This document shows positions 49,181-64,000 of a stretch of 64,000 nucleotides of DNA, in pieces; position 1 is the stretch's first letter, and each line of letters opens with the position of its first letter. The stretch lies in NCBI RefSeq assembly GCF_006345805.1, contig NC_043023.1, positions 7,998,001 through 8,062,000 on the forward strand, in the 5' to 3' direction. The notes under the pieces are model-generated. The model did no database searches. It was not told the origin of the DNA and saw nothing but the letters and a program-made list of their open reading frames with translations. The position numbers were made by a program, and so were the translations under genes. The stretch comes from Octopus sinensis. Its lineage: Eukaryota.

Positions 49181-50195
49181 AAGTGTATGATAAGTAATTC
49201 TCTCAAAATGAATAGTTTAAAACTGAATCAGAAATCTTGATAAAGAGGAAAAGTCATATCACTGTAATATCTGTGAAAAATCATTTTCTTACAGTAGTGA
49301 CATTGTTAGACACAAACGTACACATACAGGAAAGAAGCCATATCATTGTGAGATCTGTGGTAAATCATTCTGTGAACGTAAAGTTTTAACTAACCATAAG
49401 AAGATTCATACTGGTGAAAAACCATATCAGTGTGAAATCTGTGGTAAATCATTCTCTTATAATAGTCATTTGGTTAGACACAAACTTACACATACAGGAG
49501 AGAAACCATATCATTGTGATAACTGTAGTAAATCATTCTCTCGTAATAGTCATTTGGTTACTCACAATCGCATTCATACAGGAGAGAAACCTTATCATTG
49601 TGATATCTGTGGTAAATCATTCTCTGAAAATTGTTACTTACGAAGACACAAACGTATTCATACAGGAGAGAAGCCATATTACTGTGAAATAAGTGTATGA
49701 TAAGTAATTCTCTCAAAATGAATAGTTTAACTGAATCAGAAAATCTTGATAAAGAGGAAAAGTCATATCACTGTAATATCTGTGAAAATCATTTCTTACA
49801 GTAGTGACATTGTTAGACACAAACGTACACATACAGGAAAGAAGCCATCTCTTGTGAGATCTGTGGTAAATCATTCTGTGAACGTAAAGTTTTAACTAAC
49901 CATAAGAAGATTCATACTGGTGAAAACCATATCAGTGTGAAATCTGTGGGTAAATCATTCTCTTATAATAGTCATTGGTTAGACACAAACTTACACATAC
50001 AGGAGAGAAACCATATCATTGTGATAACTGTAGTAAATCATTCTCTCATAATAGTCATTTGGTTACTCACAATCGCATTCATACAGGAGAGAAACCTTAT
50101 CATTGTGATATCTGTGGTAAATCATTCTCTGAAAATTGTTACTTACGAAGACACAAACGTATTCATACAGGAGAGAAGCCATATTACTGTGAAAT
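49181..50195 (+). repeat. Tandem ~510-bp duplication of the 5' part (leader plus 5 fingers) of the giant ZNF gene
   Basis: aagtgtATGataagtaattc occurs at 49181 and 49691. The two copies differ mainly by single-base indels, mostly in homopolymers, at different positions. Confidence 0.9.
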
Positions 50196-53100
50196 CTGTG
50201 GTAAATCATTCTCTCAAAGCAGTACCTTGACTTTACACAAATGTACACATACGGGAGAGAAGCCATATCATTGTGATATCTGTGTTAAATCATTCTCTCA
50301 AAGCACTAACTTGACTGATCACATACGTACACATACTGGTGAGAAACCTTATCATTGTGATATCTGTGGTAAATCATTCTCTCAAAGCACTAACTTGACT
50401 GATCACATACGTACACATACTGGTGAGAAACCTTATCATTGTGATATCTGTGTTAAATCATTCTCTCAAAGCACTAACTTGACTGATCACATACGTACAC
50501 ATACTGGTGAGAAACCTTATCATTGTGATATCTGTGTTAAATCATTCTCTCAAAGGACTAACTTGACTGATCACATACGTACACATACTGGTGAGAAACC
50601 TTATCATTGTGATATCTGTGGTAAATCATTCTCTCAAAGCACTAACTTGACTGATCACATACGTACACATACTGGTGAGAAACCTTATCATTGTGATATC
50701 TGTGGTAAATCATTCTCTCAAAGCACTAACTTGACTGATCACATACGTACACATACTGGTGAGAAACCTTATCATTGTGATATCTGTGGTAAATCATTCT
50801 CTCAAAGCACTAACTTGACTGATCACATACGTACACATACTGGTGAGAAACCTTATCATTGTGATATCTGTGGTAAATCATTCTCTCAAAGCACTAACTT
50901 GACTGATCACATACGTACACATACTGGTGAGAAACCTTATCATTGTGATATCTGTGGTAAATCATTCTCTCAAAGCACTAACTTGACTGATCACATACGT
51001 ACACATACTGGTGAGAAACCTTATCATTGTGATATCTGTGGTAAATCATTCTCTCAAAGCACTAACTTGACTGATCACATACGTACACGTACTGGTGAGA
51101 AACCTTATCATTGTGATATCTGTGTTAAATCATTCTCTCAAAGCACTAACTTGACTGATCACATACGTACACATACTGGTGAGAAACCTTATCATTGTGA
51201 TATCTGTGTTAAATCATTCTCTCAAAGCACTAACTTGACTGATCACATACGTACACATACTGGTGAGAAACCTTATCATTGTGATATCTGTGTTAAATCA
51301 TTCTCTCAAAGGACTAACTTGACTGATCACATACGTACACATACTGGTGAGAAACCTTATCATTGTGATATCTGTGGTAAATCATTCTCTCAAAGCACTA
51401 ACTTGACTGATCACATACGTACACATACTGGTGAGAAACCTTATCATTGTGATATCTGTGGTAAATCATTCTCTCAAAGCACTAACTTGACTGATCACAT
51501 ACGTACACATACGGGAGAGAAGCCATATCATTGTGATATCTGTGTTAAATCATTCTCTCAAAGCACTAACTTGACTGATCACATACGTACACATACTGGT
51601 GAGAAACCTTATCATTGTGATATCTGTGTTAAATCATTCTCTCAAAGCACTAACTTGACTGATCACATACGTACACGTACTGGTGAGAAACCTTATCATT
51701 GTGATATCTGTGGTAAATCATTCTCTCAAAGCACTAACTTGACTGATCACATACGTACACATACTGGTGAGAAACCTTATCATTGTGATATCTGTGTTAA
51801 ATCATTCTCTCGTAATAGTGACTTGGTTAAACACAAACGTACACATACTGGAGAGAAACCATATCGTTGTGATATCTGTGGTAAATCATTCTCTCATAAT
51901 AGTGCCTTACAAAGACACAAACGTATTCATACAGGAGAGAAACCTCATCAGTGTGAAATCTGTGGTAAATCATTCTCTCGTAATAGTCATTTGGTTACTC
52001 ACAATCGCAGTCATACTGGTGAGAAACCTTATCATTGTGATATCTGTGGTAAATCATTCTCTCAAAGCACTAACTTGACTGACCACATACGTACACATAC
52101 TGGTGAGAAACCTTATCATTGTGATATCTGTGTTAAATCATTCTCTCAAAGCACTAACTTGACTGATCACATACGTACACATACTGGTGAGAAACCTTAT
52201 CATTGTGATATCTGTGGTAAATCATTCTCTCAAAGCACTAACTTGACTGACCACATACGTACACATACTGGTGAGAAACCTTATCATTGTGATATCTGTG
52301 TTAAATCATTCTCTCAAAGCACTAACTTGACTGATCACATACGTACACATACTGGTGAGAAACCTTATCATTGTGATATCTGTGGTAAATCATTCTCTCA
52401 AAGCACTAACTTGACTGATCACATACGTACACATACTGGTGAGAAACCTTATCATTGTGATATCTGTGTTAAATCATTCTCTCAAAGCACTAACTTGACT
52501 GATCACATACGTACACATACTGGTGAGAAACCTTATCATTGTGATATCTGTGGTAAATCATTCTCTCAAAGCACTAACTTGACTGACCACATACGTACAC
52601 ATACTGGTGAGAAACCTTATCATTGTGATATCTGTGTTAAATCATTCTCTCAAAGGACTAACTTGACTGATCACATACGTACACATACTGGTGAGAAACC
52701 TTATCATTGTGATATCTGTGGTAAATCATTCTCTCAAAGCACTAACTTGACTGATCACATACGTACACATACTGGTGAGAAACCTTATCATTGTGATATC
52801 TGTGGTAAATCATTCTCTCAAAGCACTAACTTGACTGATCACTTACGTACACATACGGGAGAGAAGCCATATCATTGTGATATCTGTGTTAAATCATTCT
52901 CTCAAAGCACTAACTTGACTGATCACATACGTACACATACTGGTGAGAAACCTTATCATTGTGATATCTGTGTTAAATCATTCTCTCAAAGCACTAACTT
53001 GACTGATCACATACGTACACATACTGGTGAGAAACCTTATCATTGTGATATCTGTGGTAAATCATTCTCTCAAAGCACTAACTTGACTGATCACATACGT

Positions 53101-63300: not shown

Positions 63301-64000
63301 AATCATTCTCTCAAAGCACTAACTTGACTGACCACATACGTACACATACTGGTGAGAAACCTTATCATTGTGATATCTGTGTTAAATCATTCTCTCAAAG
63401 CACTAACTTGACTGATCACATACGTACACATACTGGTGAGAAACCTTATCATTGTGATATCTGTGGTAAATCATTCTCTCAAAGCACTAACTTGACTGAT
63501 CACATACGTACACATACTGGTGAGAAACCTTATCACTGTGATATCTGTGTTAAATCATTCTCTCAAAGCACTAACTTGACTGATCACATACGTACACATA
63601 CTGGTGAGAAACCTTATCATTGTGATATCTGTGTTAAATCATTCTCTCAAAGCACTAACTTGACTGATCACATACGTACACATACTGGTGAGAAACCTTA
63701 TCATTGTGATATCTGTGTTAAATCATTCTCTCAAAGCACTAACTTGACTGATCACATACGTACACATACTGGTGAGAAACCTTATCATTGTGATATCTGT
63801 GTTAAATCATTCTCTCAAAGCACTAACTTGACTGATCACATACGTACACATACTGGTGAGAAACCTTATCATTGTGATATCTGTGTTAAATCATTCTCTC
63901 AAAGCACTAACTTGACTGATCACATACGTACACATACTGGTGAGAAACCTTATCATTGTGATATCTGTGTTAAATCATTCTCTCAAAGCACTAACTTGAC
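60387..64000 (+). CDS. Giant C2H2 ZNF array, segment 3 (~43 fingers), frameshifted and open at the window end
   Basis: Same 84-bp units, with indels near 60628 (-2), 60770 (-1), 61645 (-1) and 62878 (+1). No terminal finger or 3' UTR is reached. Confidence 0.55.

What the first reader, a model, noticed from the sequence alone, without database searches (positions are those of the whole stretch)
49187..64000. Giant, almost homopolymeric C2H2 zinc-finger array (~170 fingers, still open at window end)
Seen: six unique N-terminal fingers are followed by ~163 84-bp units. About 150 encode the same finger, CDIC(G/V)[23 protein letters not shown]. It uses the same acceptor and leader as the ordinary 6-17-finger neighbours, so it arose from a normal cluster gene. 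Knowledge (recalled, needs verifying): cephalopod ZNF genes mostly carry 10-20 fingers and the largest about 60. PRDM9-type arrays are also 84-bp minisatellites but diversify their DNA-contact residues. Here the contact residues are the invariant part. Inference: this is either a >4,700-aa repeat-reading protein that could coat hundreds of bp of simple repeat, or a satellite DNA born inside a coding exon.
Basis: partly seen in the sequence, partly recalled or inferred. Interest (0 to 1): 0.9.

Follow-up and report, generated by a model that had tools for sequence, protein, structure and literature searches.

The report
Runaway 28-kb zinc-finger repeat array
In an octopus zinc-finger gene cluster, one 84-bp finger-coding unit is copied about 320 times in tandem (28 kb, twice what the window shows), but as assembled it is not one open gene and the assembly there looks error-prone, so it is more likely a young repeat array born from a coding exon than a giant working protein.

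Summary
The repeat is real in the assembly and larger than reported. The 84-bp array starts at 49257, passes the window end and runs 13,365 bp further, about 28.1 kb and 322 amplified units. It ends where a high-copy dispersed repeat cuts a finger. The unit's 34-mer occurs 250 times in the 2.72-Gb genome (Octopus sinensis GCA_006345805.1), all in this array.

"Still open" is wrong as assembled:
- The leader plus six unique fingers occurs twice. Both ATG-started frames stop after 17 and 35 codons.
- The array has an in-frame TAG at 55099 and 16 frameshifts.
- It has no Met codon and no natural 3' end.

Ten of the 16 frameshifts sit on the Gly/Val (GGT/GTT) variable base, as both -1 and +1. The two leader copies differ by 8 homopolymer indels against 2 substitutions. 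Both patterns point to long-read consensus errors, so true frame status and copy number are uncertain.

Units are identical at synonymous sites too, so uniformity reflects recent amplification, not selection on contact residues.

Best reading (0.55): a young, single-locus array made by unequal exchange inside the finger exon of a cluster gene that is broken or unconstrained. An intact giant protein reading (CAA)n (about 0.2) and serious misassembly (about 0.15) remain open. Short-read k-mer depth would settle it.

The parts
48900..48920 (+). Candidate splice acceptor of the finger exon (pyrimidine tract followed by AG)
   Evidence: Read directly from the sequence. The same ctgcttctt..tttcag motif lies upstream of the next paralogue at L007:~8610-8630. 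This is inferred, with no transcript evidence.
49183..49692 (+). Copy 1 of the leader (ATG at 49187), fingers 1-5 and a truncated finger 6
   Evidence: The fingers are open (ORF 49227-49700, 157 aa). The ATG frame stops after 17 codons ([17 protein letters not shown]) because of +2 and -1 A-run changes relative to copy 2 and the paralogues. The copy ends in mid-finger at ...TACTGTGAAAT and jumps back to the leader.
49693..50265 (+). Copy 2 of the leader (ATG at 49697) and fingers 1-6, joined to the array
   Evidence: Here the leader is in frame with finger 1, as in the paralogues ([26 protein letters not shown]), but the frame stops after 35 codons. Against copy 1 there are 8 indel events, nearly all in short single-base runs and all in the first 290 bp, and 2 substitutions. 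The last 215 bp are identical.
50266..64000 (+). Window part of the amplified 84-bp array (163 units); it continues for 13,365 bp beyond the window
   Evidence: Searches show 32 distinct DNA unit types, four of which make up 126 units. The unit 34-mer has 250 hits in the whole genome, all accounted for by this array.
49972..55101 (+). Longest open stretch number 1 (1709 codons), closed by TAG at 55099-55101
   Evidence: It contains no Met codon. The stop is TTG>TAG in a single unit (unit type 18).
55102..60390 (+). Longest open stretch number 2 (1762 codons)
   Evidence: no Met codon. It ends because of the 83-bp unit at 60259.
51778..52029 (+). Block of three variant fingers ([39 protein letters not shown])
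   Evidence: The block recurs at 53122-53373, 60594-60842 and 61599-61849, and truncated at the 3' end of the array (L007:3212-3365). The copies differ by substitutions, so they are separate copies. Similar fingers occur in the same order in paralogue L010.
60259..62942 (+). Stretch holding the five frame-breaking units of the window (60259, 60594, within 60676-60842, 61599, 62858)
   Evidence: Each indel lies at a position where unit variants differ: AAACC/AAGCC, GAAATC/GATATC, TTGG/TTGA and GGT/GTT.
51022..51105 (+). Unit with the last zinc-ligand His changed to Arg (CAT>CGT); also at 51610-51693 and 57574-57657
   Evidence: position 68, 3 units.

Best explanation
This is a young array confined to one locus, a very large minisatellite. 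It arose by runaway unequal exchange or replication slippage among the 84-bp finger repeats of the last exon of an ordinary cluster gene. That gene had a 22-residue leader, six unique fingers and further fingers.

One finger (helix QSTNLTD) was amplified about 320-fold. Blocks of 12-16 units that include the three fingers next to it were copied as well. The parent gene is most likely no longer a constrained protein-coding gene, so the array evolves as DNA: it is homogenised in the core and more varied at the edges.

**Shown:** the structure, the size in the assembly, the confinement to one locus, the broken frames as assembled, and the dispersed-repeat junction.

**Inferred:** the amplification mechanism, the loss of function, and that many of the frameshifts are consensus errors rather than mutations.
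For: **Structure and location**
- The array is about 28.1 kb, 94% matched in the window and 98-99% beyond it.
- All 250 genomic copies of the unit 34-mer lie here.
- Variant blocks with their own substitutions show duplication at two scales.

**No usable coding frame as assembled**
- ATG-started frames stop after 17 and 35 codons, and the array has no Met codon.
- There is a TAG at 55099 and 16 frameshifts.
- The terminal fingers and stop seen in the paralogues (...HTHTGEKP*) are missing.

**3' junction**
- The last finger is cut at L007:3366 by a dispersed repeat. There were at least 2,196 first-look candidates. All 40 scored hits, 39 of them at other sites, begin at query base 1-5, and those 39 are 93-95% identical.

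**Signs of relaxed constraint**
- Three units have lost a zinc-ligand His.
- The majority unit has Val where 60 of 65 neighbouring fingers have Gly.
- New variants among units are mostly non-synonymous. Together with singletons read by eye in L006, they give dN/dS of roughly 0.4-1.3.
- Units are identical at third codon positions, so uniformity reflects recency, not protein selection.

**Precedent in the same cluster**
- Neighbouring genes carry tandem repeats of a truncated finger with a 76-bp period. These cannot code, so finger units amplify here without coding constraint.
Against: - Most frame breaks look like assembly errors. Ten of 16 lie on the single GGT/GTT variable base, in both -1 and +1 forms. 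They occur only in the part after 60 kb and are concentrated in the homogeneous stretch beyond the window. None occurs among about 124 units in the variant-rich first 10 kb. The real frame could therefore be far more intact.
- The duplicated leader also looks like an uncollapsed overlap of contig ends. A single intact 5' end is plausible.
- The only lesions not explained this way are one TAG, three His>Arg units and the 3' truncation. An open frame could still end 33 codons into the dispersed repeat.
- The two widespread unit variants other than Gly/Val are synonymous, while the other non-synonymous variants are rare. That could reflect weak purifying selection.
- No read, transcript or cross-species data could be consulted.
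Confidence: 0.55

Rival explanations
1. It is a real, intact giant gene. The true sequence would be one leader, six unique fingers and about 320 near-identical fingers in one open frame of roughly 9,000 aa. The frameshifts and the duplicated leader would be long-read consensus errors. Identical fingers with helix QSTNLTD would each read CAA, so the protein would coat (CAA)n microsatellites.
For: - There are 3,471 codons with a single stop.
- Ten of 16 frameshifts lie at one variable base in both directions, and the others lie at variant columns.
- The two leader copies complement each other. Copy 2 has the paralogue-like leader frame and copy 1 has open fingers.
- Helix QSGNLTE is the engineered CAA module (PMC9705829, Table 2). 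QSTNLTD shares positions -1 and 3 and has an acidic residue at 6.
- (CAA)10 occurs about 26,000 times, counting overlapping matches, in this genome.
Against: - Openness is expected for any recent copy of an open unit, so it is not evidence of selection.
- TTG>TAG at 55099 is a substitution, not a typical long-read error.
- There are His>Arg ligand losses and a Val-for-Gly majority.
- There is no natural C-terminus or 3' end.
- No gene model or protein resembling it was found. This is weak evidence, because those searches did not return the species' own paralogues, which searches show are encoded in this genome.
- Contiguous DNA reading by hundreds of fingers has no precedent (background knowledge).
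Confidence: 0.2
2. The size and order of the array are largely products of assembly. The true array would be much shorter or much longer, or two haplotypes or contig ends were chained, because reads could not be placed within near-identical units.
For: - The 510-bp leader duplication differs mainly by indels.
- Frameshifts at variable columns imply that reads from different unit types were piled together.
- About 13 kb of 98-99% identical units probably exceeds what noisy long reads can anchor. Read lengths and sequencing platform were not checked here. The assembly is Li et al. 2020, with 13,516 scaffolds and 2719.2 Mb (matching).
Against: - At least five variant blocks carry their own substitutions, and the variant-rich first 10 kb has a clean frame. 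This argues for a large real array of well over 100 units.
- No other contig holds the unit, so there are no leftover collapsed or duplicated pieces.
- Both ends join unique or dispersed-repeat sequence cleanly, and the window contains no N.
Confidence: 0.15
3. The array is kept for a non-protein role, for example as a source of repeat RNA or small RNAs, or as a heterochromatin block that affects the surrounding zinc-finger cluster.
For: It is a single large tandem block inside a head-to-tail gene cluster. Nothing here tests this idea.
Against: No structural or conservation evidence supports it. Nothing distinguishes it from neutral DNA.
Confidence: 0.05

Closest known systems
PRDM9 zinc-finger minisatellite (vertebrates)
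   Same: Both are 84-bp finger-coding tandem repeats in a single exon. Copy number changes by unequal exchange, and units are nearly identical at the DNA level.
   Different: PRDM9 has about 8-20 fingers, KRAB and PR/SET domains, and variation concentrated at contact positions -1, 3 and 6 (background knowledge). Here there are about 320 units. The leader and the paralogue ORF show no effector domain. Contact residues are invariant, like everything else in the unit. The frame is broken as assembled.
Finger gain and loss in clustered poly-zinc-finger genes (KRAB-ZNF clusters; the octopus C2H2 expansion)
   Same: Both involve a head-to-tail cluster of single-exon finger arrays with TGEKP linkers. 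The parent gene belongs to such a family; its paralogues have 10-15 fingers.
   Different: Known genes add or lose a few diverged fingers. This locus amplified one finger hundreds of times with almost no divergence.
Very long annotated zinc-finger proteins (for example 2,000-2,960 aa models in frogs and lizards)
   Same: These are long uninterrupted runs of Krueppel-type fingers. They were the top hits to the 1709-aa frame, with identities from 34% up to 65%.
   Different: They are three or more times shorter. Nothing retrieved is closer than 65% identical to the query, so no near-copy of this array was found. How uniform their own fingers are was not examined.
Coding-derived macrosatellites such as D4Z4 (DUX4)
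   Same: Both are tandem arrays whose unit descends from protein-coding sequence and keeps an open frame within each unit (background knowledge).
   Different: The D4Z4 unit is 3.3 kb and holds a whole retrogene. Here the unit is one 28-codon domain, with no start codon of its own.
76-bp truncated-finger repeats at the 3' ends of neighbouring genes in this cluster
   Same: They have the same family origin, the same cluster and the same head-to-tail amplification of a finger unit.
   Different: They have 2.5-9.5 copies. The period is not a multiple of three, so they are certainly non-coding.

Membership tests
Krueppel-type C2H2 zinc finger | C-x2-C-x12-H-x3-H spacing with a conserved Phe and Leu | tested here: met
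   The unit is YHCDIC(V/G)[16 protein letters not shown]. Pfam zf-C2H2 scores 133.8 bits over 6 fingers and zf-H2C2_2 scores 160.2 bits.
Krueppel-type C2H2 zinc finger | TGEKP-type linker between fingers | tested here: met
   HTGEKPY is present in every unit.
Intact protein-coding gene | A start codon joined to an uninterrupted frame that ends at a stop, with a normal 3' end | tested here: not met
   ATG frames stop after 17 and 35 codons and the array has no Met codon. There is a TAG at 55099 and 16 frameshifts. The last finger is cut by a dispersed repeat. Caveat: many of these breaks may be consensus errors.
PRDM9-type minisatellite gene | 84-bp finger minisatellite in one exon | tested here: met
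PRDM9-type minisatellite gene | PR/SET (and KRAB) domain upstream of the fingers | tested here: not met
   Only finger families were found in the leader ORF and in the complete paralogue ORF. Possible upstream exons were not searched.
PRDM9-type minisatellite gene | Variation concentrated at DNA-contact positions | tested here: not met
   Q(-1), T(2), N(3) and D(6) are invariant in the 146 main-type units. Variation is at Gly/Val, at synonymous sites and in singletons.
Satellite DNA | Long head-to-tail array of near-identical units, homogenised core and more varied edges | tested here: met
   There are 94% matches in the 5' part and 98-99% in the core. Variant blocks lie near both ends.
Satellite DNA | Many loci, or arrays of hundreds of kb | tested here: not met
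   All 250 copies of the unit 34-mer lie in this one 28-kb array. It is better called a very large minisatellite.
Satellite DNA | Evolves without coding constraint | tested here: inconclusive
   dN/dS is about 0.4-1.3 from about a dozen variants. There is one stop and three ligand losses. Too few events, and the consensus quality is doubtful.
Assembly artefact | Differences dominated by homopolymer or variable-site indels rather than substitutions | tested here: met
   The leader copies differ by 8 indels against 2 substitutions. Ten of 16 frameshifts are at the GGT/GTT base in both directions. This applies to base-level quality. Whether the size is also wrong cannot be tested without reads.

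The most novel reading that the evidence does not exclude
The true locus encodes a single translated protein of roughly 9,000 aa with about 320 near-identical fingers. It polymerises along (CAA)n microsatellites, or another simple repeat, as a dedicated repeat-coating factor. It would be by far the longest zinc-finger array known.
Probability: 0.07. Interest if true: 0.85.

Novelty: new variant of a known kind. Interest (0 to 1): 0.4.

Why it matters
If the array is real at this size, it captures a tandem repeat at an early stage, still recognisable as copies of one protein domain inside a gene cluster already known for explosive zinc-finger expansion. That would give a dated, locus-level example of how coding minisatellites escape constraint. 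It would also give a natural test of how far unequal exchange can stretch a finger array.

It is a practical warning as well. Finger counts and "giant ZNF" models taken from noisy long-read assemblies need read-level checks, because consensus errors cluster exactly at variable repeat positions.

If the minority reading is right, it would be a new class of repeat-coating DNA-binding protein.

Tried and rejected
- **Three protein database searches** (1709-aa frame, 12 identical fingers, unique fingers). They returned only generic zinc-finger proteins at 65-67% identity or less. They did not return the species' own paralogues, which searches show are encoded in this genome. The word pre-filter is swamped by HTGEKPY-type words, so the absence of a gene model is weak evidence.\n- **BLAST-type search of the own genome with four units**. 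It skipped the array itself because the words are too common, and found only paralogues at 88% or less. An exact 34-mer pattern search replaced it.\n- **Literature.** The octopus genome paper behind the \"10-20, at most 60 fingers\" recollection is not held. Searches for finger-derived satellites found nothing on point.\n- **Natural origin of the 510-bp leader duplication.** Rejected as the less likely reading because the copies differ mainly by indels.\n- **Spread of real -1 and +1 variants by unequal exchange.** Considered and judged unlikely. Both directions hit the same base, which is also the main variable base, and they occur only in the part after 60 kb, mostly in the homogeneous stretch.\n- **Remainder of the gene beyond the dispersed-repeat junction.** Looked for and not found. 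There is no finger linker motif between L007:3295 and the next gene at L007:8845.\n- **Loci from the own genome are not available as files**. The far half of the array was therefore analysed by pattern counts and by reading L006 and part of L007.\n- **Not tested.** Whether (CAA)n is enriched relative to other trinucleotide repeats; only its abundance was measured.
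Full report
**Where this is.** The window is G000:C27:7998001-8062000 of a genome with 2,719,151,902 bp in 13,516 sequences. Those figures match the Octopus sinensis assembly of Li et al. 2020 (GCA_006345805.1) as tabulated in PMC10700109 (13,516 scaffolds, 2719.2 Mb). 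The window holds a head-to-tail cluster of single-exon C2H2 zinc-finger genes on the + strand. Open frames start at 4555, 13128, 16015, 21675, 31589 and 38452 and carry about 6 to 18 fingers.

**The observation.** Tandem Repeats Finder reports one 84-bp array from 49257 to 64000 (175.6 copies, 94% matches, score 25,223).
- Splitting on the finger start gives 163 units after the unique fingers, in 32 distinct DNA types. Four types account for 126 units.
- The dominant unit encodes YHCDIC(V/G)[21 protein letters not shown], a canonical finger by spacing and by Pfam.

**The array is larger than the window.** It fills all of C27:8062001-8072000 (L006: 119.2 copies, 99% matches). It continues for 3,365 bp of the next stretch (L007). 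In total there are about 322 amplified units and about 28.1 kb from the first finger.
- A 34-mer specific to the unit occurs 250 times in the whole genome, all on the + strand.
- 113 of these are in the window, 106 in L006 and 29 in L007.
- By my inference the remaining two span the two junctions.
- The repeat therefore exists at this one locus only, and no unplaced contig carries it.

**Internal structure.** A block of three different fingers (helices [21 protein letters not shown]) recurs at 51778, 53122, 60594 and 61599. It appears again, truncated, as the very last units.
- The copies of this block differ from each other by substitutions, so they are distinct copies.
- Amplification therefore happened at two scales: single units, and blocks of about 12-16 units.
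- Similar fingers occur in the same order in an intact 15-finger paralogue (L010, 464-aa frame). That paralogue also has a finger with helix VSNILTD, close to the amplified one.
- The 5' part of the array is the most varied and the core is nearly uniform.

**The frame is not open as assembled.**
1. The leader plus six unique fingers occurs twice, at 49183-49692 and 49693-50265.
2. The paralogues read [26 protein letters not shown]... from an ATG in the same exon.
3. In copy 1 that ATG frame stops after 17 codons. In copy 2 it stops after 35.
4. The two long open stretches (1709 and 1762 codons) contain no Met codon. They are separated by TAG at 55099, a TTG>TAG change in one unit.
5. Five units between 60259 and 62942 break the frame. 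Eleven more frameshifts follow beyond the window.
6. The last finger is cut after ...CACAAACGTATTCA by a dispersed repeat. There were at least 2,196 first-look candidates. All 40 scored hits, 39 of them at other sites, begin at query base 1-5, and those 39 are 93-95% identical and lie on many chromosomes.
7. No finger linker motif follows until the next gene, 5.5 kb on. The terminal fingers and stop seen in the paralogues are absent.

**Much of that damage looks like assembly error.**
- Ten of the 16 array frameshifts sit on one base, the second base of the Gly/Val codon (GGT or GTT). That base is also the main variable site. They appear as GTG-TAAA (seven times) and GTGGTTAAA (three times).
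- From general knowledge of consensus methods, mixing reads from Gly-type and Val-type units should give exactly these -1 and +1 calls.
- None occurs among the roughly 124 units, 52 of them Gly-type, in the variant-rich first 10 kb, where reads can be anchored. Seven occur in the nearly uniform L006.
- Four of the other frameshifts also lie where unit types differ: AAACC/AAGCC at 60259, GAAATC/GATATC in the 60676 unit, TTGG/TTGA at 61599, and the hybrid at 60594.
- The two leader copies differ by 8 indel events, nearly all in short single-base runs, against 2 substitutions. All of these lie in the first 290 bp of copy 2, and the remaining 215 bp are identical. That is what an uncollapsed overlap of two low-coverage contig ends would look like. 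It is not what a natural duplicate looks like.

Base-level truth, and to some degree copy number and unit order in the uniform core, are therefore uncertain.

**What survives that discount.**
- The TAG, which is a substitution.
- Three units with the final zinc-ligand His changed to Arg.
- The truncated 3' end at a true repeat terminus.
- The majority unit carries Val after the second Cys, where 60 of 65 fingers in the neighbouring genes have Gly.

**Variation among units.** Among the 146 main-type units in the window there are 6 synonymous variants, 7 non-synonymous variants and 1 stop, against 17 synonymous and 67 non-synonymous sites.
- Four of the synonymous variants are one linked ancestral linker.
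- Including the singletons read by eye in L006, dN/dS lies between about 0.4 and 1.3. That is no detectable constraint, but also little power.
- The contact residues are invariant, but so is the rest of the unit, including third codon positions. The uniformity therefore reflects recent amplification or homogenisation of DNA, not selection on what the fingers read.

**A precedent in the same cluster.** At least three neighbouring genes end in tandem repeats of a truncated finger with a 76-bp period: 5776-6497, 23211-23397 and L008:1061-1774. That period cannot code. Finger units in this cluster therefore amplify without any coding requirement.

**Best explanation (0.55).** Runaway unequal exchange or slippage inside the finger exon of an ordinary cluster gene produced a young, single-locus array of about 320 units. 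The host gene is probably broken or unconstrained, and the array now behaves as DNA.

**Rivals.**
- An intact giant gene whose breaks are all artefacts (0.2).
- Serious misassembly of size or order (0.15).
- A non-protein role (0.05).

**If it were translated.** The helix QSTNLTD resembles the engineered CAA module QSGNLTE (PMC9705829, Table 2). (CAA)10 tracts are abundant in this genome, with 13,279 + 12,978 overlapping matches. A (CAA)n-reading function is thus conceivable, but it is purely inferred.

**Comparison with known systems.** The mechanism is the one known for PRDM9 and for finger gain and loss in clustered zinc-finger genes. This locus differs from PRDM9 in three ways:
- There is no effector domain in the leader or paralogue ORF.
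- There is no diversification of contact residues.
- It is more than ten times larger.

It resembles coding-derived macrosatellites such as D4Z4 in origin, but its unit is a single domain. It does not meet the multi-locus or hundreds-of-kb criterion for classical satellite DNA. Annotated zinc-finger proteins of up to about 2,960 aa exist in amphibians and reptiles. None found approaches this length, and none is closer than 65% identical to it.

**Limits.**
- No reads, transcripts, proteomes or other cephalopod genomes could be queried.
- The protein database searches were swamped by generic finger words and are weak negatives.
- The decisive tests are k-mer depth and variant k-mers in short reads, spanning long reads, the O. 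vulgaris locus, and Iso-Seq or RNA-seq.

**Verdict.** The claim of an open giant gene is not supported as assembled. The satellite-from-an-exon reading is favoured. I rate it a new variant of a known kind, with interest 0.4.

Noticed in passing
window 5776-6497; 23211-23397; L008:1061-1774: Tandem repeats of a truncated finger with a 76-bp period (up to 9.5 copies, 95-96% matches) begin at the stop codon of at least three cluster genes. The frames end ...KHQCRIETIS*. The period is not a multiple of three, so this is a finger-derived non-coding repeat.
   Followed up: partly
L007:3366-3545 (C27:8075366-8075545): A high-copy dispersed repeat begins exactly at the 3' junction of the array. There were at least 2,196 first-look candidates. 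The 39 scored copies elsewhere are 93-95% identical and lie on many chromosomes. It looks like a SINE. No target-site duplication or second half of the finger was found downstream.
   Followed up: partly
window 30630-31092: A 180-bp tandem repeat (2.6 copies, 97% matches). Its unit contains a motif (gttctgagttcaaattccgcc) that also occurs in reverse orientation at L007:~5530.
   Followed up: no
window 43978-45111: Three long impure (TA)n tracts (about 270, 266 and 168 bp) lie within 1.2 kb, next to a more GC-rich stretch (0.44 at 42-44 kb).
   Followed up: no
L009 (C27:18953000-18957000) versus L010 (C27:18970000-18974000); also C27:16826-16844 kb: Closely related paralogues lie 17 kb apart. 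One is frameshifted (237 + 126 aa) and the other is intact (464 aa). They have mirror-image matches at C27:16.83-16.84 Mb on the opposite strand, which suggests a large inverted segmental duplication or an assembly duplicate.
   Followed up: no
whole genome: (CAA)10 occurs 13,279 times forward and 12,978 times reverse (overlapping counts), with tracts of 90 bp or more on C1. No other trinucleotide repeat was counted for comparison.
   Followed up: partly
window 16015-16754: The open frame of this neighbouring gene (204 aa) ends before its 84-bp repeat does. It is another possibly frameshifted or decayed cluster member. It also has one Val-for-Gly finger (CDICVKSF).
   Followed up: no
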